Assembly (NCBI GenBank): GCA_030704615.1
Contig: CM060733.1
Span: 42,408,001 to 42,472,000, forward strand
From: Takakia lepidozioides
Taxonomy: Eukaryota > Plantae > Bryophyta
Length of the DNA stretch: 64,000 bases
Reading direction: 5' to 3'
The translations under genes were made by a program, and so were the position numbers. Below are positions 1-61,767 of the stretch, piece after piece; within the stretch, counting starts at the first letter, position 1, and each line of letters opens with the position of its first letter. The notes beneath the pieces were generated by a model. That model saw only the letters and a list, made by a program, of their open reading frames with translations. It was not told where the DNA came from and made no database searches.

Positions 1-1292
1 CTCACGAGATAAGGTTCTCTGATTGAAGAATGAGGCACTTTCGTTCCAACCGTAAGCTTTTTTATGTTTGCTTCTCCTTGTTTAGCGACAAAAATCTTGC
101 TCACTATGGGCAAGCATGCGCTCAAGGCTAAATTAGCTTGCCCGACACGATTACCATATACCCCCAGCCGCCTTCCCCATTGTAAGCGGTGGCTAAAATG
201 GCGTCAAACGGAAGGCTCTATACGCCCGTGTTTTGGAAAGAAAGAAGGCCTCGGAAATATCCAAGGGTTGGGATTCCCCTCGGAGCCGAGCACCCCTTCG
301 ATCCAAGTTGCCCGGGCGGGCAATGACTAGACTCTCGACTTCTCTAAGTGTGGAGACACAAAAAGAGTTAAGGTATTTTATTCCAAACAAGTTTCGCTTG
401 ATTGCTCAAGCTCATCAGTGCAACACCAAGAGATGAAGTCCTAAGAGCCAAGCCTATCCTTATATACTAGAAAAACACACTCACTATGTGCAAACGATAT
501 GGGATAATTCCCAAGGCAATAATAATGCCACTAAAGCACTAATTTAGCCTCCAAGTCAAGACTGCATTAATTAGTCAATGGTCCAAATTAATTGTTGGAA
601 CCCTTTGACTTTAACATCAACACTAGGGTTATCAAAGAGGCAAAATTAATAATGCTAGGGACATTTGCACTACAAGATCATCCTATCATTCTAGATTTAA
701 CTAAGAATGAACTCAGCTTTCGCGGGTTCCTCCAACAAATCATCGTTCAAGGAAGAAATCGAAGCTCCGGGACTTGCTGAAGCAACTCGTGGAGTCTAGG
801 GTTTAGGGTGACCCCCAAGTTCAAGGCTCGAGTGTACGAAGAGTAGTCGAGCTTAAGAACAAGGGGGGCCCGTTTACCCTCAACTACGCGTTGCGTCTGT
901 TGGTCGAGTAGAGCGGATCTGAGGTCGTAGGAGATCTTGGTGAAGCAACTCCGGATGAACGCCGCTGGATAACCTCGGGCTCGAAGACATTTGTAAAACA
1001 AAAGTCGCAAATGGTTGAACCCTTGGATGGTGCTTTCTCGTATTACGTACTGTTGGAGCTCGCCGATGACGAAAGCTTTCTTTTGGTGATGTGGATGTCA
1101 TGAGGACCAAGGCAAGTATTGATACTTGTTCTGGGCTTTTTGATGATATCTGGTAGAGAGCCGTCGAGTTTGGATGAAGTCGTCTCATTTAAAGAAGGTG
1201 ATATGCAAGATGTCGGCAAACGTCGGGCTTATGGCAGTCGTGATTTTGATGCCATCGAACATGGAACCGTAGTTCCGTAACTAGGACCAAAA
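1..1292 (-). mobile_element. Penelope-like element family A, copy 1 (diverged, 5'-truncated; pLTR plus RT C-terminal remnant 678-1292)
   Basis: Colinear with 1966-3510 and 10163-11710 but with many substitutions and a 254-bp deletion at 128/129. Translation LRARGYPAAFIRSCF...KRAPLVLKLDYS matches the RT C-terminus. Confidence 0.9.
381..423 (-). ncRNA. Minimal hammerhead ribozyme (family A), stem I mutated
   Basis: Minus strand TTGCA-CTGATGA-GCTTGA GCAA TCAAGC-GAAAC TT GTT-TGGAA; one stem I mismatch relative to the other A copies. Confidence 0.8.
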
Positions 1293-1630
1293 GCTGAGCT
1301 CATCAGTGGGAAAGAAAAAGAATGAGATACAAACCCCACCCCCCGCTTATATACTACTAGGAGTGAACTGCCTCGTGTGGACAATCTTCCAGTGGATGTC
1401 TCGTGAGGAGAAAAACCATCCAACAAACGTCACGTACGGAGAGAATAGTCCAAAAAGTCTCGGTGGGAGAAAGTCATCCAGTGGATGAAAACAAGTTCTC
1501 GACAAGAGAGAACTAGATCCAAAGAATAAAAAATCATCCAAATAGTCAATTGCATATCTCTCAAATACAACTAACTCCGTGAGTTTATGACTATGCAACA
1601 ACCAATTATACTGAAGTTACAGCATGTTGT
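1293..1630 (-). mobile_element. Family C fragment joined directly to A copy 1
   Basis: Matches 6122-6455; starts inside the ribozyme (GAGCTCATCAGTGGG). Confidence 0.85.
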
Positions 1631-1712
1631 TTAAAGGATTAGGGTTTAAGGGTTTAAGGGTTTAAGGGTTTTTAGGGTTTAGGGGTTAGGGTTTAGGGTT
1701 AGGGTTTAGGGT
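1631..1712 (+). repeat. Degenerate telomeric tract (TTTAGGG/TTTAAGGG/TTAGGG variants)
   Basis: Direct reading, about 11 units. Confidence 0.95.
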
Positions 1713-1774
1713 TCACATAAAGCGTCAAAACAAGTGTAGCCGTACCTCACAAGTTTAGGGTTTAGGGTTTAGGG
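1713..1774 (+). repeat. 33-bp family C stub, CTCACAAG linker (1746-1753) and (TTTAGGG)3
   Basis: TCACATAAAGCGTCAAAACAAGTGTAGC is the start of the C cDNA, followed by CTCACAAG and telomeric repeats 1754-1774. Confidence 0.9.
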
Positions 1775-4700
1775 TGGTTAGCAAAGGCTTGCAAAGGTAA
1801 CAAAAAGTAGAAAAATACTGGAAAAAGACACAGTAAAAATTAAGGGGGGCCGGTTCGGACCCAAATACAAATGCAATGGAAACCAAGACAAATGCATACA
1901 AAGTGCGCCTATCGTGCCTAAAGGGATGCAATAAGACTATTATGTCTTATGCAAGGACTCCCGCCCTCACGAGATAAGGTTCTCTAATTGAAGAATGAGG
2001 CACTTTCGTTCCAACCGTAAGCTTTTTTATGTTTGCTTCTCCTTGTTTAGCGACAAAAATCTTGCTCACTATGGGCAAGCATGCGCTCAAGGCACTCACA
2101 AACATAGGGTCAAGTCTCAACCCCTAGTTGGAAAACTTATATGCCCCACCTTCAAAAAGAGGTTCGTACCTCTAAGGAAGAATGGGAGGGATTACCGCAT
2201 AAGGTCATCGACGAGAAGGTTAGGTCGGCAGAGGCTTGCGCATGCCCATAGTCCTCTGATCGCTCGAGATGAACTCGAGGGAGGATCAACCAAATCCCTT
2301 CTCTCCGACCATCGGGCGTACGACAGGGGGAACCGTGTAGTCGGGGCTAAATTAGCTTGCCCGACACGATTACCATATACCCCCAGCCGCCTTCCCCATT
2401 GTAAGCGGTGGCTAAGATGGCGTCAAACGGAAGGCTCTATACGCCCGTGCTTCGGAAAGAAAAAAGGCCTCGGAAGTATCCAAGGGTTGGGATTCCCTCG
2501 GAGCCGAGCACCCCTTCGATCCAAGTTGCCCGGGCGGGCAAGGACTAGACTCTCGACTTCTCTAAATGTGGAGACACAAAAAGAGTTAAGGTGTTTTATT
2601 CCAAACAAGTTTCGCTTGATTGCTCAAGCTCATCAGTGGAACACCAAGAGATGAAGTCCTAAGAGCCAAGCCTATCCTTATATACTAGAAAAACACCCTC
2701 ACTATGTGCAAACGATATGGGATAATTCCCAAGGCAATAATAATGCCACTAAAGCACTAATTTAGCCTCCAAGTCAAGACTGCATTAATTAGTCAATGGT
2801 CCAAATTAATTGTTGGAACCCTTTGACTTTAACATCAACACTAGGGCTATCAAAGAGGCAAAATTAATAATGCTAGGGACATTTGCACTACAAAAATCAT
2901 CCTATCATTCTAGATTTAACTAGGAATGAACTCAGTTTTCGCGGATTCCTCCAACAAATCATCGCTCGAGGAAGAAACCGAAGCTCCGGGACTTGCTGAA
3001 GCAACTCGTGGAGTCTAGGGTTAGGGTGGCCCCCAAGTTCAAGGCTCGAGTGTACGAAGAGTAGTCGAGCTTAAGAACAAGGGGGGCCCGTTTACCCTCA
3101 ACTGCGCGTTGCGTCTGTTGGTCGAGTAGAGCGGATTTGAGGTCGTAGGAGATCTTGGTGAAGCAACTCCGGATGAACGCCGCCGGATAACCTCGGGCTC
3201 GAAGACGTTTGTAAAACAAAAGTCGCAAATGGTTGAACCCTTGGATGGTGCTTTCTCGTATTACGTACCGTTGGAGCTCGCCGATGACGAAAGCTTTCTT
3301 TTGGTGATGTGGATGCCACGAGGACCAAGGCAAGTATTGATACTTGTTCTGGGCCTTTTGATGACATCTCGTAGAGAGCCGTCGAGTTTGGATGAAGTCG
3401 TCTCCTTTGAGGAAGGTGATATCCAAGATGTCGGCGGACGTCGGGCTTATGGCGGTCGTGATTTTGATGCCATCGAACATGGAACCGTAGTTCCGTAACC
3501 AGGACCGGAGGCTCTTTTCGGAGCCTACCCAGATGCCAAAGCCGTCGTCGATATAGCGCTTAAGATAAAGCAGCTCTTGCTCCGATGGGCACACGTACTC
3601 CATGTACATCTCCAACCGACAGAGGAACAAACAAGCGTAAACAACTGCAAAGTTGCTCCCATGGCCGTCCCGCGAATTTGGTGCCAAAAACTACCATTGA
3701 ACTCAAGGTAATGGTGTTTCAAGACTAATCCAGCGAGGGTCATGATCAGGTCTTTTTTGTGTTTGGTGAAATTACCTCCAATAGCACATTCGAGCTCATA
3801 CAAGCCGAGCTCGGTGATGATGCTGGGATATAGAGATTCCACGTCAAACGTAAAAAGAAGAGCATGCGAGGGGACCTCGAGTTGGGAAACCTCTCGAAGA
3901 AGCGTGAGAGAATCAACCAAATGAGTGGGTTCCTTGAGAAGTACCGGAAGGAGTTGGTGATGGAGCCAAATTGAAGCATGCTCGAAGATGTAGTTGTTGT
4001 AGGAACAAATGGGTCTTCCAACAAGCACGGGTTTGTGCACCTTCGGAATGAAGTACAAAGCACAAGCTCGAAAGTCCGTGGACGACCGAGGGCGTTGGCG
4101 GATGTAATTCCATTCTTTGGTGGAGATCGCAAACCTGTAGATTGGATGGCAAGCCAACACCTCCAACCTCGACCAAAGTTCTTCCCACGGTACGGAATCC
4201 ACGGGACGATAAACTTCGGTGTCTGAGAGTTGCCGCATCGCCTCTTGCATGTACCAAGACTTGTCCATAAGCACAAGACCAAGATTTTTGTCGGCCGGCT
4301 TGATGACAAGGTCCGGATCCGACCTCAATCTTTTGAGAGCAAGTCTCAAGTGTCTCGGCAGACAAGGTCGTGCATTGCGGGCGATTCGATCCAAACGGCT
4401 AGACAAAAGATCATTACCTTCTCGAATGATGGCCTCGAGCGGTTGAGATTCCACTGGCGGATTGAATGATGGATTCGGAACGCGCCAAAGAGGAACCTCG
4501 TCGTTGTCTTTGCCCGAGAAGAACGTTCGCAACCTCAAGCTTCGAGCAAAATTGTTGAATTCGGTGATGATTGAAGATCGGGAAGGGGGAAGAGGACGAG
4601 GAATGTAATTGAGACCAAGGCCCAGGAGTTGTCGCTCCGCAAAGGAGAGAACCCTCTTGCTATAGTTGTGGATAGCAGTGTTGGTGACCCTGCATTCCAC

Positions 4701-4877
4701 TTGGGAGGGAGTCTTCCTAGCAAAGAGCAACAAAGCGTAAGCCTTCGGGTCTACGAGCGGGTACCAGAAGAGACTCCTCGTGCGCCCCCGCGTCTGTGAG
4801 GAGGTACGTATGGCCGCTTCGTCTTCCTCGTCGTCGTCGTCGCACCCTTCGTCGTGGCCGGTTTTCCGTTGACCCTC
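1775..4877 (-). mobile_element. PLE family A copy 2 (pLTR plus whole RT core with 1-nt frameshifts, truncated within ORF1)
   Basis: Near-identical to 9977-13076. ORFs 3525-4733 and 2959-3687 carry KPADKNLG, FTFDVESLY, GTAMG and RYIDDG; single-base deletions near 3021 and 3657. Confidence 0.95.
2599..2641 (-). ncRNA. Minimal hammerhead ribozyme (family A)
   Basis: Minus strand TTCCA-CTGATGA-GCTTGA GCAA TCAAGC-GAAAC TT GTT-TGGAA: catalytic boxes, 6-bp stem II with GNRA loop, 5-bp stem I. Confidence 0.9.
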
Positions 4878-4933
4878 ACAAGTTTAGGGTTTAGGGTTTA
4901 GGGGTTTAGGGTTTAGGGGTTTAGGGTTTAGGG
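4875..4933 (+). repeat. CTCACAAG linker and telomeric tract (about 7 units) capping A copy 2
   Basis: Direct reading; includes two TTTAGGGG variants. Confidence 0.95.
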
Positions 4934-5568
4934 TTTACATAAAGCGTCAAAACAAGTGTAGCAGTACAACGCGGATGCACCGGGTGCAAGATAAACACGA
5001 TCCGGGCAAACGAGTTTTAGGGGGGCGAGTTATGCACCCTTGGAAAAATTTCAGATCCTGTGAATCAAACCTGAAAGGAGAGATCCTGAGAGACAGGAAA
5101 CTAGAATAGAAGTATGCGAGGTGTCCTGAAATGCAACTGCAAACCTATGCAAGAGGCAAATGTGCGTATGAGAATTATTTCACTGGATGCACAGGAGAAT
5201 AAGAACCCTATCTCTGTTTTGCAAGAGAATGGACACACTAGGAACAACTTAGATGCAGATCTCATATGCACTACTCGAAAGGGAGTTTATGGCATAGAAT
5301 AGAAGTATGCGAGGTGTCCTGAAATGCAACTGCAAACCTATGCAAGAGGCAAATGTGCGTATGAGAACTATTTCACTGGATGCACAGGAGAATAAGAACC
5401 ATATCTCTGTTTTGCAAGAGAATGGACACACTAGGAACAACTTAGATGCAGATCTCACATGCACGACTCGAAAGGGAGTTTATGGCATGCCGTATAGACA
5501 CAGAGCACATAACAATGCAATGATCTAAAGCAGGGGATACAAACGCATCTAAAACTCGACAACTTCAA
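4934..5568 (-). mobile_element. Family C fragment with internal 193-bp tandem duplication
   Basis: Matches 5598-6040; GAATAGAAGTATGCG...GGAGTTTATGGCAT is repeated at 5104 and 5297. Confidence 0.9.
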
Positions 5569-5597
5569 GTTTAGGGTTTAGGGTTTAGGGTTTAGGG
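5569..5597 (+). repeat. (TTTAGGG)4 telomeric tract
   Basis: Direct reading. Confidence 0.95.
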
Positions 5598-6096
5598 TTC
5601 ACATAAAGCATCAAAACAAGTGTAGCAGTACAACGCGGATGCACCGGGTGCAAGATAAACACGATCCGGGCAAACAAGTTTTAGGGGGGGGCCAGTTATG
5701 CACCCCTGGAAAAATTTCAGATCCTGTGAATCAAACCTGAAAGGAGAGATCCTGAGAGACAGGAAACTAGAATAGAAGTATGCGAGGTGTCCTGAAATGC
5801 AACTGCAAACCTATGCAAGAGGCAAATGTGCGTATGAGAACTATTTCACTGGATGCACAGGAGAATAAGAACCCTATCTCTGTTTTGCAAGAGAATGGAC
5901 ACACTAGGAACAACTTAGATGCAGATCTCCCATGCACTACTCGAGAGGGAGTTTATGGCATGCCGTATAGACACAGGGCACATAACAATGCAATGATCTA
6001 AAGCAGGGGATACAAACGCATCTAAAACTCGACAACTTCAAAGGGTGAGACTACGAGGCAAGATCATGCAAAGTAGTGAAGCCAAATCTTTATAGA

Positions 6097-6138
6097 CCCC
6101 AGACTAGTTTCGCTCAGCGCGTGAGCTCATCAGTGGGA
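6097..6138 (-). ncRNA. Minimal hammerhead ribozyme (family C)
   Basis: Minus strand TCCCA-CTGATGA-GCTCA CGCGC TGAGC-GAAAC TA GTC-TGGGG; GUC cleavage triplet, palindromic ACTAGT stem III. Confidence 0.92.
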
Positions 6139-7253
6139 AAGAAAAGGAATGAGATACAAACCCCACCCCCCGCTTATATACTACTAGGAGTGAACTGCCT
6201 CGTGTGGACAATCTTCCAGTGGAGGTCTCGTGAGGAGAAAAACCATCCAACAGATGTCTCGTACGGAGAGAATAGTCCAAAAAGTCTCGGTGGGAGAAAG
6301 TCATCCAGTGGATGAAAACAAGTTCTCGACAAGAGAGAACTAGATCCAAAGAATAAAAATCATCCAAATAGTCAATTGCATATCTCTCAAATACAACTAA
6401 CTCCGTGAGTTTATGACTATGCAACAACCAATTATGCTGAAGTTAGAGCATGTTGTGCAAAGTCGTAAGGGCTGAAACCACTTCGAAAGGAACGCACAAC
6501 TCGTAAGAGCTTTTGCACACGCAGACCATCGCGCAACCATCGTCTTGCTAAAGCCTGCAGCTGTGTTGTCCTGAACGTGTCCAACCACGATCCCCACCTT
6601 CCGACCTCCAAGACGAAACACGGCTCGGTCTTCGTATTGTTGCCTCATCACATGAATGAGCAGCTTGGTCAAAAGAATGAAGATCAACATCTGCCTCCAT
6701 TACGTGAAGGCGATTAAAGATGTGTTGCAGCTAACACTGTAAGAAAGTTTAGGGTTCACATAAAGCGTCAAAACAAGTGTAGCAGTACAACGCGGATGCA
6801 CCGGGTGCAAGATAAACACGATCCGGGCAAACAAGTTTTAGGGGGGGGGCAGTTATGCACCCCTGGAAAAATTTCAGATCCTGTGAATCAAACCTGAAAG
6901 GAGAGATCCTGAGAGACAGGAAACTAGAATAGAAGTATGCGAGGTGTCCTGAAATGCAACTGCAAACCTATGCAAGAGGCAAATGTGCGTATGAGAACTA
7001 TTTCACTGGATGCACAAGAGAATAAGAACCCTATCTCTGTTTTGCAAGAGAATGGACACACTAGGAACAACTTAGATGCAGATCTCCCATGCACTACTCG
7101 AGAGGGAGTTTATGGCATGCCGTATAGACACAGAGCACATAACAATGCAATGATCTAAAGCAGGGGATACAAACGCATCTAAAACTCGACAACTTCAAAG
7201 GGTGAGACTACGAGGCAAGATCATGCAAAGTAGTGAAGCCAAATCTTTATAGA

Positions 7254-7295
7254 CCCCAGACTAGTTTCGCTCAGCGCGTGAGCTCATCAGTGGGA
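7254..7295 (-). ncRNA. Minimal hammerhead ribozyme (family C)
   Basis: Same sequence as 6097-6138. Confidence 0.92.
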
Positions 7296-8409
7296 AAGAA
7301 AAGGAATGAGATACAAACCCCACCCCCCGCTTATATACTACTAGGAGTGAACTGCCTCGTGTGGACAATCTTCCAGTGGAGGTCTCGTGCGGAGAAAAAC
7401 CATCCAACAGATGTCTCGTACGGAGAGAATAGTCCAAAAAGTCTCGGTGGGAGAAAGTCATCCAGTGGATGAAAACAAGTTCTCGACAAGAGAGAACTAG
7501 ATCCAAAGAATAAAAATCATCCAAATAGTCAATTGCATATCTCTCAAATACAACTAACTCCGTGAGTTTATGACTATGCAACAACCAATTATGCTGAAGT
7601 TAGAGCATGTTGTGCAAAGTCGTAAGGGCTGAAACCACTTCGAAAGGAACGCACAACTCGTAAGAGCTTTTGCACACGCAGACCATCGCGCAACCATCGT
7701 CTTGCTAAAGCCTGCAGCTGTGTTGTCCTGAACGTGTCCAACCACGATCCCCACCTTCCGACCTCCAAGACGAAACACGGCTCGGTCTTCGTATTGTTGC
7801 TTCATCACATGAATGAGCAGCTTGGTCAAAAGAATGAAGATCAACATCTGCCTCCATTACGTGAAGGCGATTAAAGATGTGTTGCAGCTAACACTGTAAG
7901 AAAGTTTAGGGTTCACATAAAGCATCAAAACAAGTGTAGCAGTACAACGCGGATGCACTGGGTGCAAGATAAACACGATCCGGGCAAACAAGTTTTAGGG
8001 GGGGGCAGTTATGCACCCCTGGAAAAATTTCAGATCCTGTGAATCAAACCTGAAAGGAGAGATCCTGAGAGACAGGAAACTAGAATAGAAGTATGCGAGG
8101 TGTCCTGAAATGCAACTGCAAACCTATGCAAGAGGCAAATGTGCGTATGAGAACTATTTCACTGGATGCACAGGAGAATAAGAACCCTATCTCTGTTTTG
8201 CAAGAGAATGGACACACTAGGAACAACTTAGATGCAGATCTCCCATGCACTACTCGAGAGGGAGTTTATGGCATGCCGTATAGACACAGAGCACATAACA
8301 ATGCAATGATCTAAAGCAGGGGATACAAACGCATCTAAAACTCGACAACTTCAAAGGGTGAGACTACGAGGCAAGATCATGCAAAGTAGTGAAGCCAAAT
8401 CTTTATAGA

Positions 8410-8451
8410 CCCCAGACTAGTTTCGCTCAGCGCGTGAGCTCATCAGTGGGA
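8410..8451 (-). ncRNA. Minimal hammerhead ribozyme (family C)
   Basis: Same sequence as 6097-6138. Confidence 0.92.
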
Positions 8452-8511
8452 AAGAAAAGGAATGAGATACAAACCCCACCCCCCGCTTATATACTACTAG
8501 GAGTGAACTGC

Positions 8512-8538
8512 CACAAGTTTAGGGTTTAGGGCTTAGGG
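8512..8538 (+). repeat. CACAAG linker and 3 telomeric repeats
   Basis: CACAAG TTTAGGG TTTAGGG CTTAGGG. Confidence 0.92.
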
Positions 8539-9952
8539 TTCACATAAAGCATCAAAACAAGTGTAGCAGTACAACGCGGATGCACCGGGTGCAAGATAAA
8601 CACGATCCGGGCAAACAAGTTTTAGGGGGGCCACTTATGCACCCCTGGAAAAATTTCAGATCCTGTGAATCAAACCTGAAAAGAGAGATCCTGAGAGACA
8701 GGAAACTAGAATAGAAGTATGCGAGGTGTCCTGAAATGCAACTGCAAACCTATGCAAGAGGCAAATGTGCGTATGAGAACTATTTCACTGGATGCACAGG
8801 AGAATAAGAACCCTATCTCTGTTTTGCAAGAGAATGGACACACTAGGAACAACTTAGATGCAGATCTCACATGCACTACTCGAAAGGGAGTTTATGGCAT
8901 AGAATAGAAGTATGCGAGGTGTCCTGAAATGCAACTGCAAACCTATGCAAGAGGCAAATGTGCGTATGAGAACTATTTTCACTGGATGCACAGGAGAATA
9001 AGAACCCTATCTCTGTTTTGCAAGAGAATGGACACACTGGGAACAACTTAGATGCAGATCTCACATGCACTACTCGAAAGGGAGTTTATGGCATGCCGTA
9101 TAGACACAGGGCACATAACAATGCAATGATCTAAAGCAGGGGATACAAACGCATCTAAAACTCGACAACTTCAAAGGGTGAGACCACGAGGCAAGATCAT
9201 GCAAAGTAGTGAAGCCAAATCTTTATAGACCCCAGACTAGTTTCGCTCAGCGCGTGAGCTCATCAGTGGGAAAGAAAAGGAATGAGATACAAACCCCACC
9301 CCCCGCTTATATACTACTAGGAGTGAACTGCCTCGTGTGGACAATCTTCCAGTGGATGTCTCGTGAGGAGAAAAACCATCCAACAGATGTCTCGTACGGA
9401 GAGAATAGTCCAAAAGTCTCGGTGGGAGAAAGTCATCCAGTGGATGAAAACAAGTTCTCGACAAGAGAGAACTAGATCCAAAGAATAAAAATCATCCAAA
9501 TAGTCAATTGCATATCTCTCAAATACAACTAACTCCGTGAGTTTATGACTATGCAACAACCAATTATGCTGAAGTTAGAGCATGTTGTGCAAAGTCGTAA
9601 GGGCTGAAACCACTTCGAAAGGAACGCACAACTCGTAAGAGCTTTTGCACACGCAGACCATCGCGCAACCATCGTCTTGCTAAAGCCTGCAGCTGTGTTG
9701 TCCTGAACGTGTCCAACCACGATCCCCACCTTCCGACCTCCAAGACGAAACACGGCTCGGTCTTCGTATTGTTGCCTCATCACATGAATGAGCAGCTTGG
9801 TCAAAAGAATGAAGATCAACATCTGCCTCCATTACGTGAAGGCGATTAAAGATGTGTTGCAGCTAACACTGTAAGAAAGTTTAGGGTTCACATAAAGCGT
9901 CAAAACAAGTGTAGCAGTACAACGCGGATGCACCGGGTGCAAGATAAACACG
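8539..9952 (-). mobile_element. Family C, one full unit (with the 193-bp duplication) plus a 66-bp start of the next
   Basis: Same unit as 5598-6754; seamless internal junction at 9880-9886. Confidence 0.9.
9230..9271 (-). ncRNA. Minimal hammerhead ribozyme (family C)
   Basis: Same sequence as 6097-6138. Confidence 0.92.
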
Positions 9953-9976
9953 GGTTTAGGGTTTAGGGTTTAGGGT
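9953..9976 (+). repeat. Telomeric tract (about 3 units)
   Basis: Direct reading. Confidence 0.95.
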
Positions 9977-10795
9977 TTAGCAAAGGCTTGCAAAGGTAAA
10001 AAAATAGAAAAATACTGGAAAAAGACACAGTAAAAATTAAGGGGGGCCGGTTCGGACCCAAATACAAATGCAATGGAAACCAAGACAAATGCATACAAAG
10101 TGCGCCTATCGTGCCTAAAGGGATGCAATAAGACTATTATGTCTTATGCAAGGACTCCCGCCCTCACGAGATAAGGTTCTCTAATTGAAGAATGAGGCAC
10201 TTTCGTTCCAACCGTAAGCTTTTTTATGTTTGCTTCTCCTTGTTTAGCGACAAAAATCTTGCTCACTATGGGCAAGCATGCGCTCAAGGCACTCACAAAC
10301 ATAGGGTCAAGTCTCAACCCCTAGTTGGAAAACTTATATGCCCCACCTTCAAAAAGAGGTTCGTACCTCTAAGGAAGAATGGGAGGGATTACCGCATAAG
10401 GTCATCGACGAGAAGGTTAGGTCGGCAGAGGCTTGCGCATGCCCATAGTCCTCTGATCGCTCGAGATGAACTCGAGGGAGGATCAACCAAATCCTTCTCT
10501 CCGACCATCGGGCGTACGACAGGGGGAACCGTGTAGTCGGGGCTAAATTAGCTTGCCCGACACGATTACCATATACCCCCAGCCGCCTTCCCCATTGTAA
10601 GCGGTGGCTAAGATGGCGTCAAACGGAAGGCTCTATACGCCCGTGCTTCGGAAAGAAAAAAGGCCTCGGAAGTATCCAAGGGTTGGGATTCCCCTCGGAG
10701 CCGAGCACCCCTTCGATCCAAGTTGCCCGGGCGGGCAAGGACTAGACTCTCGACTTCTCTAAATGTGGAGACACAAAAAGAGTTAAGGTGTTTTA

Positions 10796-10838
10796 TTCCA
10801 AACAAGTTTCGCTTGATTGCTCAAGCTCATCAGTGGAA
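10796..10838 (-). ncRNA. Minimal hammerhead ribozyme (family A)
   Basis: Same sequence as 2599-2641. Confidence 0.9.
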
Positions 10839-10874
10839 CACCAAGAGATGAAGTCCTAAGAGCCAAGCCTATCC

Positions 10875-10882
10875 TTATATAC
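10875..10882 (-). promoter_or_regulatory. Putative TATA box of the family A pLTR
   Basis: GTATATAA about 48 nt upstream of the ribozyme core; same motif and spacing in B and C. Confidence 0.6.
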
Positions 10883-11093
10883 TAGAAAAACACCCTCACT
10901 ATGTGCAAACGATATGGGATAATTCCCAAGGCAATAATAATGCCACTAAAGCACTAATTTAGCCTCCAAGTCAAGACTGCATTAATTAGTCAATGGTCCA
11001 AATTAATTGTTGGAACCCTTTGACTTTAACATCAACACTAGGGCTATCAAAGAGGCAAAATTAATAATGCTAGGGACATTTGCACTACAAAAA

Positions 11094-13205
11094 TCATCCT
11101 ATCATTCTAGATTTAACTAGGAATGAACTCAGCTTTCGCGGATTCCTCCAACAAATCATCGCTCGAGGAAGAAACCGAAGCTCCGGGACTTGCTGAAGCA
11201 ACTCGTGGAGTCTAGGGTTTAGGGTGGCCCCCAAGTTCAAGGCTCGAGTGTACGAAGAGTAGTCGAGCTTAAGAACAAGGGGGGCCCGTTTACCCTCAAC
11301 TGCGCGTTGCGTCTGTTGGTCGAGTAGAGCGGATCTGAGGTCGTAGGAGATCTTGGTGAAGCAACTCCGGATGAACGCCGCCGGATAACCTCGGGCTCGA
11401 AGACGTTTGTAAAACAAAAGTCGCAAATGGTTGAACCCTTGGATGGTGCTTTCTCGTATTACGTACCGTTGGAGCTCGCCGATGACGAAAGCTTTCTTTT
11501 GGTGATGTGGATGCCACGAGGACCAAGGCAAGTATTGATACTTGTTCTGGGCCTTTTGATGACATCTCGTAGAGAGCCGTCGAGTTTGGATGAAGTCGTC
11601 TCCTTTGAGGAAGGTGATATCCAAGATGTCGGCGGACGTCGGGCTTATGGCGGTCGTGATTTTGATGCCATCGAACATGGAACCGTAGTTCCGTAACCAG
11701 GACCGGAGGCTCTTTTCGGAGCCTACCCAGATGCCAAAGCCGTCGTCGATATAGCGCTTAAGATAAAGCAGCTCTTGCTCCGATGGGCACACGTACTCCA
11801 TGTACATCTCCAACCGACAGAGGAACAAACAAGCGTAAACAACTGCAAAGTTGCTCCCCATGGCCGTCCCGCGAATTTGGTGCCAAAAACTACCATTGAA
11901 CTCAAGGTAATGGTGTTTCAAGACTAATCCAGCGAGGGTCATGATCAGGTCTTTTTTGTGTTTGGTGAAATTACCTCCAATAGCACATTCGAGCTCATAC
12001 AAGCCGAGCTCGGTGATGATGCTGGGATATAGAGATTCCACGTCAAACGTAAAAAGAAGAGCATGCGAGGGGACCTCGAGTTGGGAAACCTCTCGAAGAA
12101 GCGTGAGAGAATCAACCAAATGAGTGGGTTCCTTGAGAAGTACCGGAAGGAGTTGGTGATGGAGCCAAATTGAAGCATGCTCGAAGATGTAGTTGTTGTA
12201 GGAACAAATGGGTCTTCCAACAAGCACGGGTTTGTGCACCTTCGGAATGAAGTACAAAGCACAAGCTCGAAAGTCCGTGGACGACCGAGGGCGTTGGCGG
12301 ATGTAATTCCATTCTTTGGTGGAGATCGCAAACCTGTAGATTGGATGGCAAGCCAACACCTCCAACCTCGACCAAAGTTCTTCCCACGGTACGGAATCCA
12401 CGGGACGATAAACTTCGGTGTCTGAGAGTTGCCGCATCGCCTCTTGCATGTACCAAGACTTGTCCATAAGCACAAGACCAAGATTTTTGTCGGCCGGCTT
12501 GATGACAAGGTCCGGATCCGACCTCAATCTTTTGAGAGCAAGTCTCAAGTGTCTCGGCAGACAAGGTCGTGCATTGCGGGCGATTCGATCCAAACGGCTA
12601 GACAAAAGATCATTACCTTCTCGAATGATGGCCTCGAGCGGTTGAGATTCCACTGGCGGATTGAATGATGGATTCGGAACGCGCCAAAGAGGAACCTCGT
12701 CGTTGTCTTTGCCGGAGAAGAACGTTCGCAACCTCAAGCTTCGAGCAAAATTGTTGAATTCGGTGATGATTGAAGATCGGGAAGGGGGAAGAGGACGAGG
12801 AATGTAATTGAGACCAAGGCCCAGGAGTTGTCGCTCCGCAAAGGAGAGAACCCTCTTGCTATAGTTGTGGATAGCAGTGTTGGTGACCCTGCATTCCACT
12901 TGGGAGGGAGTCTTCCTAGCAAAGAGCAACAAAGCGTAAGCCTTCGGGTCTACGAGCGGGTACCAGAAGAGACTCCTCGTGCGCCCCCGTGTCTGTGAGG
13001 AGGTACGTATGGCCGCTTCATCTTCGTCATCGTGGTCGTCGCACCCTTTGCCGTGGCCGGTTTTCCGTTGACCCTCGCTGAAGGTTTTCGGCCTCCCGTA
13101 CCAGAGCCGGTTGTGCGGTTCGGGCCTGACCTCTTGTTGAAAGAGGTAGGTGACGCAGCAGAACGGGTGGAGACCCGGATACCTTTCTGCTGCTTGCCGT
13201 TTCCC
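11094..13205 (-). CDS. Penelope-like reverse transcriptase, endonuclease-lacking (frame extends upstream of the 12932 TTG to a -1 frameshift site)
   Basis: LLGLGLNYIP, KPADKNLG, PKVHKP...GRPICS, FTFDVESLYPSI, GTAMGSNFA, KRYIDDGF, YLPWSSWHP. The frame is open and conserved with family B up to 13205, with no in-frame ATG between 13205 and the 12932 TTG. Confidence 0.93.
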   Translation of the reverse strand, partial: GKRQAAERYPGLHPFCCVTYLFQQEVRPEPHNRLWYGRPKTFSEGQRKTGHGKGCDDHDDEDEAAIRTSSQTRGRTRSLFWYPLVDPKAYALLLFARKTPSQVECRVTNTAIHNYSKRVLSFAERQLLGLGLNYIPRPLPPSRSSIITEFNNFARSLRLRTFFSGKDNDEVPLWRVPNPSFNPPVESQPLEAIIREGNDLLSSRLDRIARNARPCLPRHLRLALKRLRSDPDLVIKPADKNLGLVLMDKSWYMQEAMRQLSDTEVYRPVDSVPWEELWSRLEVLACHPIYRFAISTKEWNYIRQRPRSSTDFRACALYFIPKVHKPVLVGRPICSYNNYIFEHASIWLHHQLLPVLLKEPTHLVDSLTLLREVSQLEVPSHALLFTFDVESLYPSIITELGLYELECAIGGNFTKHKKDLIMTLAGLVLKHHYLEFNGSFWHQIRGTAMGSNFAVVYACLFLCRLEMYMEYVCPSEQELLYLKRYIDDGFGIWVGSEKSLRSWLRNYGSMFDGIKITTAISPTSADILDITFLKGDDFIQTRRLSTRCHQKAQNKYQYLPWSSWHPHHQKKAFVIGELQRYVIRESTIQGFNHLRLLFYKRLRARGYPAAFIRSCFTKISYDLRSALLDQQTQRAVEGKRAPLVLKLDYSSYTRALNLGATLNPRLHELLQQVPELRFLPRAMICWRNPRKLSSFLVKSRMIG

Positions 13206-14002
13206 GACTTTCCGCCAGGATTCGCCTTAGGCTTACTAGCCGGTTTGGTCCCAAGCTTCTGGGCCTTAGGTTTCACCTGGATGGAATTCACCACCTTTTT
13301 CACCTCCTTGAGTACTTCCTTGACCACCTCGCGTTTCACGAGGGTAGCAATGGACGGTTCCACAGGGAGGGTCTCCGCTTCTTCCATAGCACCTTCCCGA
13401 GCAACGTTGCGAGCTGCGATAGCCGCGGCCTTGCTGACGTCGGAAAGTTGTTTGTGAATGAGAAATGCATCTACATGAGTAACGAAGAGATTGCTAAGAT
13501 GAAGATGCCACGACTCGATGGAAGACTTAGACTTGTCACCTATCAAATTTAAGGATCGTAAAGACGAAATCAAATCCGAGAGGCGAGTCTCAAAGACCGG
13601 TTTCGATTGCTCGAGCTTGTGGGTCAAGCTAGCAAGTCGAGATTCTTGGGCTTTGATGAGTGCTTCAAAGCACTTGATCCGATATGCGGTTGTGCATTCG
13701 GCCAGGCTCGCATCAAGGACGGATTGGGCCTCGGGATCTCCTATTTGAAGTTTAGGAGGACTCATTCTAAGGGAGTTGGGTATGGTGCCTTCTTCGAATT
13801 GCACTCGCAATTTTTGAAGGTACTTGGAAGTCTTTTCATGCTCATGCCTAAGACTTTTGAATTCCTTGACCGATGTATGCACAAATGCAAGCAAAGGGGG
13901 AGGAATGGAGATATCCATGCTAGAAGAAGTAGACGCGGATGCATGAGAAGGGCCGACGCCTAAGCTAGGACATGGACGTTTGTTACCTGCTAGTTCCGCC
14001 AT
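12950..14002 (-). CDS. PLE family A ORF1 (350 aa; helical/coiled-coil N-half, basic low-complexity C-tail; probable nucleic-acid-binding protein)
   Basis: Intact ATG ORF. Shares G.IP..LR/CR...PKL.I, RN.AR..AM..A..LP.EP.IA.LV..EV and GNG with family B ORF1. Confidence 0.85.
   Translation of the reverse strand: MAELAGNKRPCPSLGVGPSHASASTSSSMDISIPPPLLAFVHTSVKEFKSLRHEHEKTSKYLQKLRVQFEEGTIPNSLRMSPPKLQIGDPEAQSVLDASLAECTTAYRIKCFEALIKAQESRLASLTHKLEQSKPVFETRLSDLISSLRSLNLIGDKSKSSIESWHLHLSNLFVTHVDAFLIHKQLSDVSKAAAIAARNVAREGAMEEAETLPVEPSIATLVKREVVKEVLKEVKKVVNSIQVKPKAQKLGTKPASKPKANPGGKSGNGKQQKGIRVSTRSAASPTSFNKRSGPNRTTGSGTGGRKPSARVNGKPATAKGATTTMTKMKRPYVPPHRHGGARGVSSGTRS
13155..13205 (-). promoter_or_regulatory. 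-1 programmed ribosomal frameshift signal (G_GGA_AAC, 5-nt spacer, hairpin)
   Basis: Heptamer 13205-13199 in the ORF1 phase; stem GCAGCAGAA/TTCTGCTGC with inner CGGGT/ACCCG; the -1 frame is the RT frame. Confidence 0.8.
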
Positions 14003-14012
14003 GGAAAAAGGA

Positions 14013-14027
14013 GTTTAGGGTTTAGGG
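14013..14027 (-). promoter_or_regulatory. Element-encoded (CCCTAAA)2C just upstream of the ORF1 ATG; putative telomere-annealing/priming site
   Basis: A copies 2 and 3 begin at or within a few bases of this site after telomeric tracts (1775, 9977). Confidence 0.75.
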
Positions 14028-14317
14028 TGGTCAACAAAGGCTTGCAAAGATAACAAAACGTAGAAAAAATACTGGAAAAAGACATAGTAAATTTTAAGGG
14101 GGGCCGGTTAGGACCCAAATACAAATGCAATGGAAACCAAGACAAATGCATACAAAGTGCGCCTACCGTGCCTAAAGGGATGCTATAAGACTATTATGTC
14201 TTATGCAAGGACTCCCGCCCTCACGAGATAAGGTTCTCTAATTGAAGAATGAGGCACTTTCGCTCCAACCGTAAGCTTTTTTATGTTTGCTTCTCCTTGT
14301 TTAGCGACAAAAATCTT

Positions 14318-14346
14318 CTCACAAGTTTAGGGTTTAGGGTTTAGGG
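14318..14346 (+). repeat. CTCACAAG linker and (TTTAGGG)3
   Basis: Direct reading. Confidence 0.95.
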
Positions 14347-14817
14347 TCTACAAAAGAGTGGAAACAAATACATGTAGCAGTGCAACAGAGTTCGAACCGC
14401 GAATGCACCGGGTGCATTAGTAGCAAAGTGCAAACAAGTTTTTAGGGGGGCCAGTTATGGACACCTTAGAAAGCTTGTAGAAATATCTAGCCTGTGAATC
14501 AAAACTAAAAGAATCGATCCTGAGACACAAAACTAGAATAGAACAGAGTGGGAGTGATGTTGCAACGTTCTAAAGTGCAAATGCAAGTATATGCAAGAGG
14601 CAAGTGTGTGTGATGAAACTAATTCACTGTAAGGACAGGAGAATAGTAACCTATCTCTAAGAAAGAGAATAGACACACTAAAGAGCAGTCTTAGAAGGAG
14701 ATCTAACATGTAACACTCGAAAAGGAGTTTAAAACATGCACTACAATAGACACAAAGCAAATGAATGCAATGAACTATGCAGAAGATCAAATCTAAAACT
14801 CAACAACAACAACAACG
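14347..14817 (-). mobile_element. Family B pLTR segment, inverted relative to 17104-17573
   Basis: Reverse complement of 17104-17573; begins at the B CCCTAAAC site. Confidence 0.92.
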
Positions 14818-14820
14818 AGA

Positions 14821-16711
14821 GAAGAGGGCTCGCAAGCTCTTCTGGTGGCCGTTGAGGGATGTAGAAGGCTATAAGCTTTATCTTTTTTCCTGCAAGAGAG
14901 TCTCTCAGGCAGAGAACAGGTTAACCAACATGGCCATCCACAACATGGCCAATCGTCCACTCTCTTGTTTTGAAAAGAAGCTTTTAGGCCTAGGTTTGAG
15001 TTTTATTCCTCATCCTACTCCTCCTTCTCCCTCTTCTATTCTTGATGCTTATGACTCTTTGGCTCGATCTTTACGTCTTCGATATCACTTCAGGGATGCT
15101 AGAGATAGACCCATTCCTCCTTTCAGAGTTCCTCAACCTTCTTGGGATCAGTGTGTGCGACTTCCTGCTCTGGAAAGCATTATCATCGAGGGTCGCAACA
15201 TTGTAGAGACTCGGTTAAGGGAGGTGGCTCGCTCTGCCTACAGGTCTTCTATTCGAGGTCACCTCAAGACTGCGATACGCTGTCTGAGCAGAGATGAGTC
15301 CATCGTCATCAAGCCAGCAGACAAAAATCTTGGGTTGGTGATCATGCGGAAGGACTGGTATGTGGATGAGGCTCACCGCCAACTCCACGATGGACAAGTT
15401 TACGAATCCGTGGCAGAGATCCCATTTGACAATCTCACATATGGTTTGGATGCATTGCTCGCTTCCGCTCTCTTGTTTGGATTGATTGACAGGCAGACAA
15501 GGGACTTTTTGGCGCTCAAGCCCCAAGGGGGCTACCGACCCTGCATGTTTTATCTCGTGCCCAAAATGCACAAGCCCGTGGTGGTTGGGAGGCCGATTTG
15601 TTCATACAACGGATATGTTTTTGAGCACGCATCCAAGTGGTTGCATCACCATCTGTTTCCCATTCTGCTCGAGGAAGATAACCATTTGGTAGATTCTATA
15701 TCTTTGTTGAAAGATCTGTCGGATAGGCAACTTCCTGGCGACGTGCTTTTGTTCACCTTTGATGTGGAGTCATTGTATCCTAGCATTTCTACTGGGGACG
15801 GGCTTCGACGATTGAAGGAGATGATTGCCGGCAAGCTCAAGTCACCTCGGTTTGAAAGATTCGTCCTGAGTCTTTCTCGCATGGTGTTGGAGAATAACTA
15901 TCTTCAATTTGGCTCCAGCTATTGGCATCAGATCCGAGGCACGGCAATGGGTAGCAACTTTGCTGTTGTTTATGCTTGTCTCTTTCTTTGCAGCTTAGAA
16001 AGAGAGTTGGCTGGTGCTGGAGGAGGCATGTGGCCTCTATACTACAAGAGATACATCGATGATGGATTTGGAATTTGGGCAGGATCTCGGGCAAGTTTGG
16101 AGGCTTGGCTCGATGGATACAACTCTCTTAGTCCCACAATTCGGATTCAAAGGGTAATCTCTGAGTCTACGGTTGACATTCTTGATATTAAGTTCTTCAA
16201 GGGAGCTGATTTTGTCAACCATGGGATTTTATCTTCGAGATGTCATCAAAAGGCACTCAACAGATACCAGTATTTGCCATGGACCTCGTGTCATCCACGA
16301 CACCAAAAACGAGCATTCATCATTGGCGAATTACGACGTTACACTTTGAGGGAGAGCACACGCGCAGGTTTTTCTGAGATCAGGCAACTGTTCTATGAGC
16401 GACTGCGTGCTCGAGGCTATCCAAAGTCTTTTATCTTGGAGTGTTTTGTGCTTTGTGACTATGCACAACGTGCTACACTGTTGACTTCAGAGTCCACTCG
16501 TAAGTTGACGGGCAAGCGGGCCCCCTTGGTTTTGAAACTTGAGCATTCGCGTTATACTCAAGCTCTAAGCTTTGAGGGAGTCCTAAACCCTAAACTTCAT
16601 GAGGGCTTTTTGAAAGTTCCGCAGTTAGCGTCTTTTGACAGACCTATGGTATGTTGGAAGAGGGCACGGAACTTGCGTTCCTATCTAGTTCGTGCTATGT
16701 TACAAACCTAG
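14821..16711 (+). CDS. PLE family B reverse transcriptase (uninterrupted; native N-terminus lost at the inversion junction)
   Basis: KPADKNLG, PKMHKP...GRPICS, FTFDVESLYPSI, GTAMGSNFA, KRYIDDGF; no endonuclease domain. Confidence 0.93.
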
Positions 16712-61423: not shown

Positions 61424-61767
61424 TTTGGATTTCTTCTTTCTATGGAAGATGAAAGGATGTGTCATGTACCATGCTGGAACTGAAACTGTTTCTCAGAACA
61501 AATGACATTGCTCCAAGAGTCTAGGTGTTTATCCTCATGGCATTTTGTAGGACATTAGAGAACCAATATTTGTGCAGAGGTGAAGGGAAGTTAGAGTAAC
61601 CGTTTGATTGCTTTTGCAAGAGATGGTGCTCGATGGCGGTGGCAAGGGATTCCCATTTCTCTCCAAACTGGTGTACCGAAGATGGAGGGTTGGCTGCCTC
61701 ATCAGAATTCAGAAGAAAACTCGCCATGTCTGTCTGATTCGAGTTATGCCAGGAGCTCCTGAGCTTT

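What the first reader, a model, noticed from the sequence alone, without database searches (positions are those of the whole stretch)
1..14817. Three-family telomere-extending retroelement system alternating with telomerase-type repeats
Seen: nine element segments (A, C, C, A, C, C, C, A, B), all antisense to the G-rich strand. Of the eight whose start is visible, seven begin at or within a few bases of the element's own CCCTAAAC site right after a (TTTAGGG)n tract; each ends at a variable truncation point, and seven ends are capped by new repeats. The RTs lack an endonuclease. The leftmost copy and tract are the most decayed and the rightmost A copy is intact. Established: endonuclease-deficient, telomere-associated PLEs (Athena, Coprina and Selaginella types) are thought to prime on chromosome 3' ends. 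Inference: this records successive rightward end-extension events by PLE RT and telomerase in turn, with two autonomous families and one dependent family sharing the same end.
Basis: partly seen in the sequence, partly recalled or inferred. Interest (0 to 1): 0.85.

Follow-up and report, generated by a model that had tools for sequence, protein, structure and literature searches.

The report
Plant telomere-repeat and Penelope-like retroelement array
A 14.8-kb stretch of a plant-type genome is a chain of endonuclease-lacking Penelope-like retroelements, each joined by its own tail to a short telomere repeat tract; this arrangement was already described for the spike moss Selaginella, and here it lies inside the assembled sequence, not at its end.

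Summary
Window 1-14817 holds 13 element segments, not nine, from three families (A, B, C). All are antisense to the TTTAGGG strand. Eleven of the 12 visible starts lie at the element's own CCCTAAAC terminus. A and B encode ORF1 plus a reverse transcriptase (RT). That RT falls in a streptophyte clade with Selaginella, Cryptomeria, Ginkgo and Closterium, shows no GIY-YIG endonuclease, and folds most like TERT, the telomerase RT. All three families carry a hammerhead ribozyme supported by covariation. C is a 1.15-kb non-coding derivative of a B-like element.

- The array is not terminal. The G-strand points into at least 49 kb of transposon-rich DNA.
- Most of B lies in the opposite orientation.
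- A and B copies occur elsewhere in the window without tracts.

Junctions fall into two classes. Full-length ends are followed by one or two repeat units, consistent with a template jump. Truncated ends are followed by three or more units, and five of seven of these carry all or part of an unexplained linker, CTCACAAG, overlapping the truncated end by 0-5 nt. The linker may be a telomerase RNA footprint, but this could not be tested here.

The parts
1..1288 (-). A copy 1. Covers A positions ~3852 to 2311 with an internal ~250-bp deletion. Its 3' end lies off the window and its 5' end is not capped.
   Evidence: blastn against the full A copy gives 96.9-99.2% identity. RT amino-acid identity is 89%.
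1295..1637 (-). C fragment q285-625. It starts inside the hammerhead after the filler AAAAGC (1289-1294) and is the only segment that does not start at a 3' terminus.
1638..1711 (+). Degenerate telomeric tract of about 10-11 units, including TTTAAGGG, TTAGGG and TTTAGGGG variants.
1712..1745 (-). c: an abortive 34-nt fragment of the C 3' terminus.
   Evidence: sequence reading
1746..1774 (+). Linker CTCACAAG followed by (TTTAGGG)3.
1775..4877 (-). A copy 2, q939-4039. It starts at the A 3' terminus. The RT is broken by two frameshifts. Hammerhead core at 2609-2636.
4878..4933 (+). ACAAG (the CTC before it is shared with A) followed by 7 units, with a 15-nt periodicity.
4934..5568 (-). C copy q706-1149 carrying a 194-bp internal duplication.
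5569..5597 (+). G (the CAA before it is shared with C) followed by 4 units.
5598..7903 (-). Two full-length C copies (5598-6746 and 6755-7903) separated by a single GTTTAGGG (6747-6754). Hammerhead cores at 6107-6133 and 7264-7290.
7904..8512 (-). A single repeat unit (7904-7911) followed by C copy q548-1149 (7912-8512).
8513..8538 (+). ACAAG followed by 3 units, the last being CTTAGGG.
8539..9878 (-). Full-length C copy carrying the 194-bp duplication.
9879..9975 (.). A single unit (9879-9886), then c, a 66-nt C 3' fragment on the minus strand (9887-9952), then GG plus 3 units (9953-9975).
9976..14014 (-). A copy 3, full length at 4039 bp. ORF1 is 12950-14002 (350 aa). The RT frame is open from 13226 to 11094, is -1 relative to ORF1 and overlaps it by 277 nt. 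Hammerhead core at 10806-10833.
14015..14027 (+). Two units after the full-length A 5' end.
14028..14322 (-). a: a 295-nt fragment of the A 3' terminus, 95.5% identical to copy 3.
14323..14346 (+). AAG followed by 3 units. The whole CTCACAAG spans 14318-14325.
14347..14817 (-). B 3' fragment (q3448-3926). It is uncapped and joined head-to-head to a sense-strand B.
14821..17581 (+). B on the sense strand, 5'-truncated (q1166-3926). The RT frame 14822-16711 is intact. Hammerhead core at 17009-17035. The copy ends in CCCTAAAC.
17582..19528 (+). Second sense-strand B (q1-1948), in tandem with the first. ORF1 is broken. The copy is cut at 19528 by a repeated transposon that also occurs at 52920-56695.
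44076..45421 (+). B 3' fragment (q3612-3926), one unit, then B 5' part with an intact ORF1 (44398-45441). It abuts coding sequence of a Ty3/gypsy-type (LTR retrotransposon) RT, and there is no telomeric tract.
61763..64000 (.). Inverted pair of A fragments: antisense q2372-1152, then sense q2260-3293 running off the window. There is no telomeric tract.

Best explanation
The region is a relic chain of endonuclease-deficient Penelope-like retroelements (PLEs) of a streptophyte lineage.

Shown:
- A and B encode ORF1 plus an RT that lacks an endonuclease and is most similar in fold to TERT.
- C is a non-coding derivative of a B-like element.
- All three families carry a hammerhead ribozyme 0.5-0.8 kb upstream of a 3' terminus that ends in CCCTAAAC.

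Inferred:
- The RNA pairs through that terminus with a G-rich (TTTAGGG)n 3' end, and the RT extends that end with antisense cDNA. This explains the uniform polarity and start points.
- When the RT reaches the RNA 5' end it jumps to the 3' end of another PLE RNA. This gives 1 unit for C and B and 2 units for A.
- When synthesis aborts, the truncated end receives three or more telomeric units and is then used again as a primer. The repeats are most likely added by telomerase.
- The array is no longer a chromosome end. It ends in a head-to-head B junction of the kind PLEs make, and is followed by transposon-rich DNA.
For: - Tracts and polarity.
- RT: invariant D297, D396 and D397 and the YIDD motif. 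It falls in a clade supported at 99 with Selaginella, Cryptomeria and Ginkgo, and at 98 when Closterium is added. That clade is separate from the nine GIY-YIG-bearing relatives, which group at 100.
- No endonuclease: relatives with the endonuclease align to the window only over their RT part.
- Fold: the AF2 model has pLDDT 91.6, and the best PDB matches are TERT (3du5, E 8e-11).
- Hammerhead: 9 core matches against 0.46 expected, all on the element sense strand. In an alignment with Cryptomeria, Selaginella and a Logan (public read-archive assembly) relative, 95.8% of cells pair and 7 of 12 pairs have compensatory changes, while shifted controls pair in under 50% of cells.
- C and B share a 13-nt 5' terminus and about 610 nt of 3' sequence at 72% identity, with an identical hammerhead core.
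- Relatives show the same anatomy. In Selaginella GL377752.1 and Cryptomeria BSEH01000784.1, element 3' ends are followed by (CCCTAAA)n, and 32-35-nt 3' fragments lie between tracts.
- Two junction classes: 1-2 units after 6 of 6 full-length ends, and 3 or more after 7 of 7 truncated ends. The linker is seen at 0 of 6 versus 5 of 7 (one-sided p 0.016).
- Literature for the model: PMC8557442, PMC4209133 and PMC12477314, all citing Gladyshev and Arkhipova 2007.
Against: - The array is not terminal here. The G-strand points into at least 49 kb of further sequence, and the only N gap is at 30687-31186.
- Tracts are very short, 3-11 units.
- A and B copies occur without tracts and in both orientations at 44076 and 61763.
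- No result here shows telomerase activity.
- The linker CTCACAAG is not explained by the published model.
- The rightmost a fragment is more divergent from copy 3 than copy 2 is, so a strict left-to-right age order is not shown.
- The organism and the position of the window on its chromosome are unknown.
Confidence: 0.62

Rival explanations
1. The elements inserted into a pre-existing interstitial telomeric tract. They primed on nicks or breaks in the G-strand of a long internal (TTTAGGG)n block, and the repeats after truncated 5' ends are leftover tract, not new caps. No chromosome end was ever involved.
For: The array is internal. The same polarity and start rule would result. The Selaginella and Cryptomeria relatives also lie inside scaffolds, next to longer tracts.
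Against: The model does not explain why truncated ends are followed by the same non-telomeric 8-mer in a microhomology register. It also does not explain why tracts after truncated ends are so uniform (3, 3, 3, 3, 4, 7 units). The degenerate left tract next to clean right tracts suggests different ages.
Confidence: 0.17
2. The PLE RT did everything and telomerase played no part. All repeats, and the linker, are copied from element RNAs whose 3' tails read (CCCUAAA)nCUUGUGAG, for example read-through transcripts of array copies. The chain grew by serial template jumping, possibly at a double-strand break.
For: Single-unit junctions and head-to-head junctions show that jumping is frequent. Three units is the modal count after the linker. 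The added linker never exceeds 8 nt, as expected if an RNA ends there. The 15-nt periodicity of tract 4883-4933 fits repeated copying of a ...CCCUAAACCCUAAAC end.
Against: The linker is absent from all 6 jumps that follow full-length copies. It would have to be attached to three different families. It is not the 5' end of A, B or C.
Confidence: 0.15
3. The chain arose mostly by DNA-level amplification, through unequal crossing-over or segmental duplication of a few founder insertions.
For: The C copies at 5598-8512 are 99.5% alike and tandem. Blocks 1704-4877 and 9879-13076 align at 98.5% and include a C fragment, a tract and the A 3' end.
Against: The two blocks differ at the junction itself: 34 nt plus linker in one, 66 nt plus GG in the other. 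Truncation points all differ. The C variants with and without the 194-bp duplication are interleaved.
Confidence: 0.04
4. The arrangement is an assembly artefact, for example a fold-back chimeric read or a mis-join at the B inverted repeat. In that case the array really is terminal and ends near 14817.
For: Inverted 479-bp arms at 14339-14817 and 17103-17581 are 99.6% identical. A 500-N scaffold gap shows that the assembly is scaffolded.
Against: There is no gap at 14818. The two B parts do not overlap in element coordinates (q3448 against q1166). A second antisense-to-sense junction of the same kind exists for A at 62969-62974, and PLEs are known for inverted insertions (PMC8557442).
Confidence: 0.02

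Closest known systems
Telomere-associated EN-deficient PLEs of Selaginella moellendorffii (Gladyshev and Arkhipova 2007, as cited in PMC12477314, PMC4209133 and PMC8557442)
   Same: They belong to the same RT clade (P0014, 46-48% identity; support 99). Both have an ORF1 + RT layout without an endonuclease. Both have a canonical type-I hammerhead, and the covariation alignment includes L006. Both have 3' ends followed by (CCCTAAA)n, with ~35-nt 3' fragments between tracts.
   Different: The species is different and unidentified. RT identity is below 50%. Three co-resident families are present, including an abundant non-coding B derivative. Tracts are much shorter. The CTCACAAG linker is not seen at the three Selaginella junctions examined.
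Athena elements and Terminons of bdelloid rotifers
   Same: They are EN-minus PLEs oriented towards chromosome ends, with reverse-complement telomeric repeats at the 3' end, a hammerhead motif, 5' truncations capped by repeats, and chains of units (PMC8557442, PMC12477314).
   Different: In Athena the ribozyme is described as immediately adjacent to the repeats. Here it lies 509-830 nt upstream of the terminus. Athena is specific to rotifers and basal in PLE trees. No giant units or captured host genes are present here.
Coprina clade (EN-minus PLEs of fungi and other taxa)
   Same: They are EN-minus, carry short (NNNCCC)n 3' repeats, are associated with telomeres, and have ORF1 separated from the RT by a frameshift (PMC8557442, figure 1 legend).
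   Different: Membership could not be tested because no named Coprina reference sequences were available. Fungal hammerheads have a long helix III, whereas the ones here are of the plant type with a 2-bp helix III (PMC4209133).
Drosophila HeT-A/TART/TAHRE and Bombyx SART/TRAS
   Same: They are retroelements that build or occupy chromosome ends in head-to-tail, uniformly oriented arrays.
   Different: They are non-LTR (LINE) elements with poly(A) or an endonuclease. Drosophila has no telomerase and no interspersed telomerase repeats. SART and TRAS cut the repeats with an endonuclease.
Retrozymes, which are non-autonomous hammerhead-bearing retroelements
   Same: C is a short non-coding element with a hammerhead, presumably mobilised in trans by an autonomous partner.
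   Different: Plant retrozymes use LTR-retrotransposon machinery and circular RNA. C shares its termini with a PLE (B), and there is no evidence of circular RNA.

Membership tests
Penelope-like elements (PLE) | The RT belongs to the PLE/TERT branch, with PLE-type N-terminal motifs and thumb. | tested here: met
   168 homologues were found. The close ones carry the precomputed Pfam families DUF8422 + HTH_animal, and a sister clade carries a C-terminal GIY-YIG. The best fold matches are TERT. The local Pfam copy gave no hit at all.
Penelope-like elements (PLE) | A hammerhead ribozyme motif lies in the terminal or 3' region. | tested here: met
   The core motif occurs 9 times against 0.46 expected. 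Covariation gives 95.8% of cells paired and 7 of 12 pairs compensatory. The Rfam HH9 match scores only 16.7 bits, below the gathering score of 52.
Penelope-like elements (PLE) | Copies form tandem (pseudo-LTR) and inverted arrangements. | tested here: met
   There are partial + full tandems (a-A, c-C, B-B) and head-to-head junctions at 14818 and 62969-62974.
EN-deficient telomere-associated PLEs (Athena/Coprina/Selaginella type) | No GIY-YIG endonuclease at either end of the coding region. | tested here: met
   tblastn with nine relatives that carry the endonuclease aligned only their RT part. ORF1 has no Pfam hit. Every member of the surrounding 31-row clade lacks PF01541.
EN-deficient telomere-associated PLEs (Athena/Coprina/Selaginella type) | The 3' terminus carries the reverse complement of the host telomeric repeat. 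| tested here: met
   A, B and C all end in CCCTAAAC (A in two units), as do the Logan, Cryptomeria and Selaginella relatives.
EN-deficient telomere-associated PLEs (Athena/Coprina/Selaginella type) | Uniform orientation relative to the G-strand, with 5'-truncated ends followed by telomeric repeats. | tested here: met
   All 13 segments are antisense. All 7 truncated ends inside the chain are followed by 3 or more units.
EN-deficient telomere-associated PLEs (Athena/Coprina/Selaginella type) | Location at chromosome termini. | tested here: not met
   In this window the array is followed on its telomere-facing side by at least 49 kb of other DNA. The position of the window on its chromosome is unknown, so a subtelomeric location cannot be excluded.
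Coprina or Athena clade (phylogenetic membership) | The RT groups with named Coprina or Athena reference RTs. | not testable with these tools
   No named reference sequences could be obtained, and the 2007 and 2017 primary papers are not held. Only grouping with the Selaginella protein is shown.

The most novel reading that the evidence does not exclude
The 8-nt linker CTCACAAG is copied from the telomerase RNA of this species, from the residues immediately 3' of its template (5'-...CCCUAAA-CUUGUGAG-3'). On this reading the array is a natural record of chromosome healing. Aborted PLE cDNA ends were aligned on telomerase RNA outside the template by 0-5 nt of microhomology. They were extended by about one template pass (two units) and were then captured again by a PLE RNA. 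That would be direct sequence evidence that telomerase and its sister RT alternate on one DNA end, and it would reveal a telomerase RNA flank from genomic scars alone.
Probability: 0.35. Interest if true: 0.72.

Novelty: new member of a known kind. Interest (0 to 1): 0.45.

Why it matters
A 2025 review calls telomere-associated transposons rare in plants and names only the Selaginella PLEs and Silene Retand elements (PMC12477314). This window, together with the relatives found here in Cryptomeria, Ginkgo and Closterium, suggests that an endonuclease-lacking PLE lineage with CCCTAAAC termini is widespread in streptophytes.

The array is clean enough to read individual events: full-length against aborted copies, template jumps against re-capping, and a non-coding parasite (C) outnumbering its likely B-type helper. 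The recurrent linker gives a concrete and cheap test of whether telomerase and PLE RTs really alternate on the same end. That bears on the old idea that telomerase descends from such elements.

Tried and rejected
- **Pfam and PDB sequence searches.** Pfam hmmscan of the A and B ORFs returned nothing, even at E 10, although the same tool worked on neighbouring LTR-element ORFs. The domain evidence therefore rests on precomputed annotations of homologues. An NCBIfam scan failed because of a frame error and was not repeated. A PDB sequence search found nothing.
- **Rfam.** A scan of the whole window found no hammerhead. A local scan found only a weak HH9 match.
- **Organism.** It was not identified. 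An exact-protein look-up of ORF1 found nothing. A gag-protease search gave only unnamed Logan hits at 87% identity. A B RT search gave at most 52% identity. No paper cites the Logan run accessions.
- **Telomerase RNA test of the linker.** No plant telomerase RNA sequences are held as text, and a full-text search for the linker string found nothing relevant.
- **Metagenome scan for the linker plus repeats.** It found 4 contigs. One is another array of fragments and tracts, but there CACAAG sits at the same element end both times, so it is uninformative.
- **Other origins for the linker.** It is not an element 5' end, and the 8-mer occurs nowhere else in the window except one chance match at 43240.
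- **Palindrome from sister-chromatid fusion at 14818.** Rejected, because the right arm does not mirror the left.
- **Frameshift signal.** No canonical XXXYYYZ slippery site was found in the 277-nt overlap of ORF1 and the RT frame.
Full report
**1. What is in the sequence**

The 21-mer (TTTAGGG)3 with up to one mismatch occurs 9 times, all on the + strand and all between 1671 and 14346. Shuffles give 0.00. A unit-level scan finds no multi-unit tract of either polarity in the remaining ~50 kb.

Self-comparison and mapping against one reference copy per family resolve three families.
- A is 4039 bp. The reference copy is window:9976-14014:-.
- C is 1149 bp. The reference copy is window:5598-6746:-.
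- B is 3926 bp in a coordinate frame obtained by placing window:17582-18746 before window:14821-17581, two copies that overlap at 99.4%. This frame was used only for numbering.

Between 1 and 14817 there are 13 segments, all antisense to the G-rich strand. In order they are:
- A (1-1288)
- C (1295-1637)
- c, 34 nt (1712-1745)
- A (1775-4877)
- C (4934-5568)
- C (5598-6746)
- C (6755-7903)
- C (7912-8512)
- C (8539-9878)
- c, 66 nt (9887-9952)
- A (9976-14014)
- a, 295 nt (14028-14322)
- B, 471 nt (14347-14817)

Eleven of the 12 visible starts are at the family's own terminus (...CCCTAAAC in the sense strand). The exception begins inside the C hammerhead after a 6-nt filler. Uniform orientation has a probability of 2^-12 given the first segment.

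**2. What the elements are**

A copy 3 has an intact ORF1 (350 aa) and an RT frame. B has an intact RT frame in one copy (14822-16711) and an intact ORF1 in another (44398-45441). The two ORF1s are homologous (28% identity, E 4e-21), and the RTs are 51% identical.

Both RTs have the motifs FDVESLYPSI, GTAMGS and YIDD, and the catalytic aspartates are invariant across 50 homologues. The database search returned 168 relatives. The nearest named ones are from Cryptomeria japonica, Selaginella moellendorffii, Ginkgo and Closterium. The nearest of all is an unnamed read-archive assembly at 70% identity.

In a 118-row tree, A and B lie in a 28-row clade with Selaginella, Cryptomeria and Ginkgo (support 99). 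That clade becomes 31 rows when Closterium is added (support 98). None of these proteins has a GIY-YIG domain. The nine relatives that do have one form a separate clade (support 100). Those nine align to the window only over their RT portion, so no endonuclease remnant lies in the 3' regions.

An AlphaFold model of the A RT built on 50 homologues has mean pLDDT 91.6. Its best matches among solved structures are telomerase catalytic subunits (Tribolium 3du5 at E 8e-11, then Candida and human), ahead of LINE-1, R2 and group II intron RTs.

In both A and B the residue where relatives begin (MFW...) is Leu. The A RT frame overlaps ORF1 by 277 nt in the -1 frame. This fits the frameshift-separated ORF1 drawn for PLEs in PMC8557442. 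Expression by frameshifting is an inference, and no canonical slippery site was found.

**3. Ribozyme**

The hammerhead core CTGATGA...GAAAC occurs 9 times against 0.46 expected, always on the sense strand of an A, B or C copy. It lies 830 (A), 546 (B) and 509 (C) nt upstream of the 3' terminus.

I aligned it with the matching sites of a Logan relative, Cryptomeria and Selaginella. The three-helix type-I structure forms a standard pair in 95.8% of cells. Seven of 12 pairs have changes on both sides, and sliding the partners by one to three columns drops pairing below 50%. Rfam itself gives only a sub-threshold HH9 match. Canonical type-I hammerheads in Selaginella PLEs are already published (PMC4209133).

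**4. C is a dependent, B-like element**

C has no ORF longer than 97 codons. Its last ~610 nt are 72% identical to the B 3' region, with an identical hammerhead core. Its first ~25 nt share the 13-mer TGTTAGCTGCAAC with the B 5' end. Mobilisation by a B-type RT is an inference.

Two C variants, with and without a 194-bp internal duplication, are interleaved in the chain. This argues for separate retrotransposition events and against local duplication.

**5. Two classes of junction**

*After a full-length 5' end.* The six cases are three C junctions, one A junction, the B-B tandem at 17574, and the B junction at 44383. The next element follows after only one unit (two for A), which is no more than the element's own terminus. 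This is what an RT jump from the 5' end of one RNA to the 3' end of another would give. A multimeric transcript would give the same result.

*After a truncated end.* In all seven cases there are at least three units (about 10-11 degenerate, then 3, 7, 4, 3, 3, 3).
- In five of the seven, the repeats are preceded by all or the 3' part of CTCACAAG, in a register that overlaps the truncated element's own sequence by 0-5 nt. At 1746 the full 8 nt are added. At 4875 the CTC is shared with A. At 8511 a C is shared with the C element. At 5566 the CAA is shared with C. At 14318 either the full 8-mer is added or CTCAC is shared with A.
- The added part never exceeds 8 nt.
- The linker is absent from all six full-length junctions (one-sided Fisher p 0.016; 0.027 without the 44383 junction).
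- It is not a 5' end of A, B or C.
- It is not seen at the three Selaginella junctions I could read.

Some RNA therefore appears to present 5'-...(CCCUAAA)n-CUUGUGAG. The simplest candidates are the telomerase RNA just 3' of its template, or an acceptor RNA that ends there. I could not test either. No plant telomerase RNA sequences are held, and the telomerase RNA gene of this organism is not available.

**6. Context**

The array is not terminal in this sequence. At 14818-14820 the antisense B fragment (ending at q3448) meets a sense-strand B that starts at q1166. That B runs to its CCCTAAAC at 17581 and is followed directly by a second B from its first base. The second B is cut at 19528 by a transposon that recurs at 52920.

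The rest of the window holds gag, protease and integrase ORFs of LTR elements. It also holds a B partial-plus-5' copy abutting Ty3/gypsy-type RT coding sequence at 44076, with 2 nt of microhomology and no tract, and an inverted pair of A fragments at 61763-64000. The only N run is at 30687-31186.

Head-to-head junctions therefore recur (B at 14818, A at 62969-62974). They match the 'complex tandem/inverted insertions' described for PLEs (PMC8557442). Copying of a free antisense cDNA from its 3' end would give exactly the observed sense-strand B that starts at a truncation point and ends at CCCTAAAC. That is an inference.

**7. Relatives elsewhere**

The Cryptomeria scaffold BSEH01000784.1 carries three tandem sense copies. 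They are followed by (CCCTAAA)10, a 32-nt 3' fragment of another element, and more tracts. Selaginella scaffold GL377752.1 shows element ends followed by (CCCTAAA)n with 35-nt 3' fragments between tracts. Three read-archive assemblies of the closest complete RT are circular permutations of one ~3.9-kb unit, with the junction ...AAACCCTAAAC. The anatomy is therefore shared across the clade.

**8. Comparison with what is known**

The system matches the published description of EN-minus PLEs. [quoted passage not shown] 2017). A plant example in Selaginella is already known (PMC12477314, PMC4209133). The two primary papers are not held, so their details come from the citing papers.

Differences here:
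- The organism is another, unidentified one.
- Three families sit on one array, including an abundant non-coding one.
- The ribozyme is far from the terminus.
- The tracts are very short.
- The location is internal.
- The linker is present.

**9. Verdict**

It is unproven on telomerase and on 'rightward growth of a live end'. It is not new as a concept, so I class the array as a new member of a known kind. The junction dichotomy and the linker are the parts worth following up.

No toxin, effector or animal or crop virus sequence was involved.

Noticed in passing
window 798-812, 3016-3030, 11214-11228; L005 3560-3575; L006 11612-11630; L004 1626-1641: Inside the C-terminal part of the RT ORF, the residues T-L-N-P are encoded as ACCCTAAACCC, which gives an internal telomere-repeat-like site. 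The same codons are kept in Cryptomeria, Selaginella and a Logan relative, although overall protein identity is only about 50%. It may be an internal priming or pairing site, or just codon coincidence. No array segment starts there.
   Followed up: partly
window 4883-4933: The seven-unit tract has a 15-nt periodicity of GTTTAGGGTTTAGGG blocks with an extra G. That would result from repeated abortive copying of an RNA ending ...CCCUAAACCCUAAAC, or from a two-repeat telomerase template.
   Followed up: no
window 36287-36395: A near-perfect 109-nt hairpin matches the Rfam family mir-3119 on both strands at 52-55 bits, below the gathering score of 80. It is most likely a palindromic transposon feature and not a microRNA gene.
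   Followed up: no
window 19528-23344 and 52920-56695: Two copies 98% identical over 3.8 kb are 33 kb apart. Each contains an 87-bp tandem array (21957-22299 and 55307-55649) and integrase-type ORFs. The first copy starts exactly where the second B copy is cut.
   Followed up: partly
window 31682-31908, 37013-37155, 41572-41814: There are three CTGTG-rich minisatellites with periods of about 10, 20 and 30 nt and units such as GGCTGTGAC. They lie next to LTR-element ORFs and are probably parts of one transposon family.
   Followed up: no
window 30687-31186: A run of exactly 500 N is a scaffold gap. The mechanical ORFs listed across it are meaningless.
   Followed up: no
L007 (metagenome contig Ga0209555_10084542) 350-1382: This is another chain of short sequence fragments separated by (TTTAGGG)3-5 tracts, all on one strand, from an unknown organism with TTTAGGG telomeres. 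It looks like the same kind of end-addition record.
   Followed up: partly
window 1289-1300: The only junction inside the chain that lacks repeats joins a truncated A to a C fragment starting in helix II of its hammerhead, through the filler AAAAGC.
   Followed up: no
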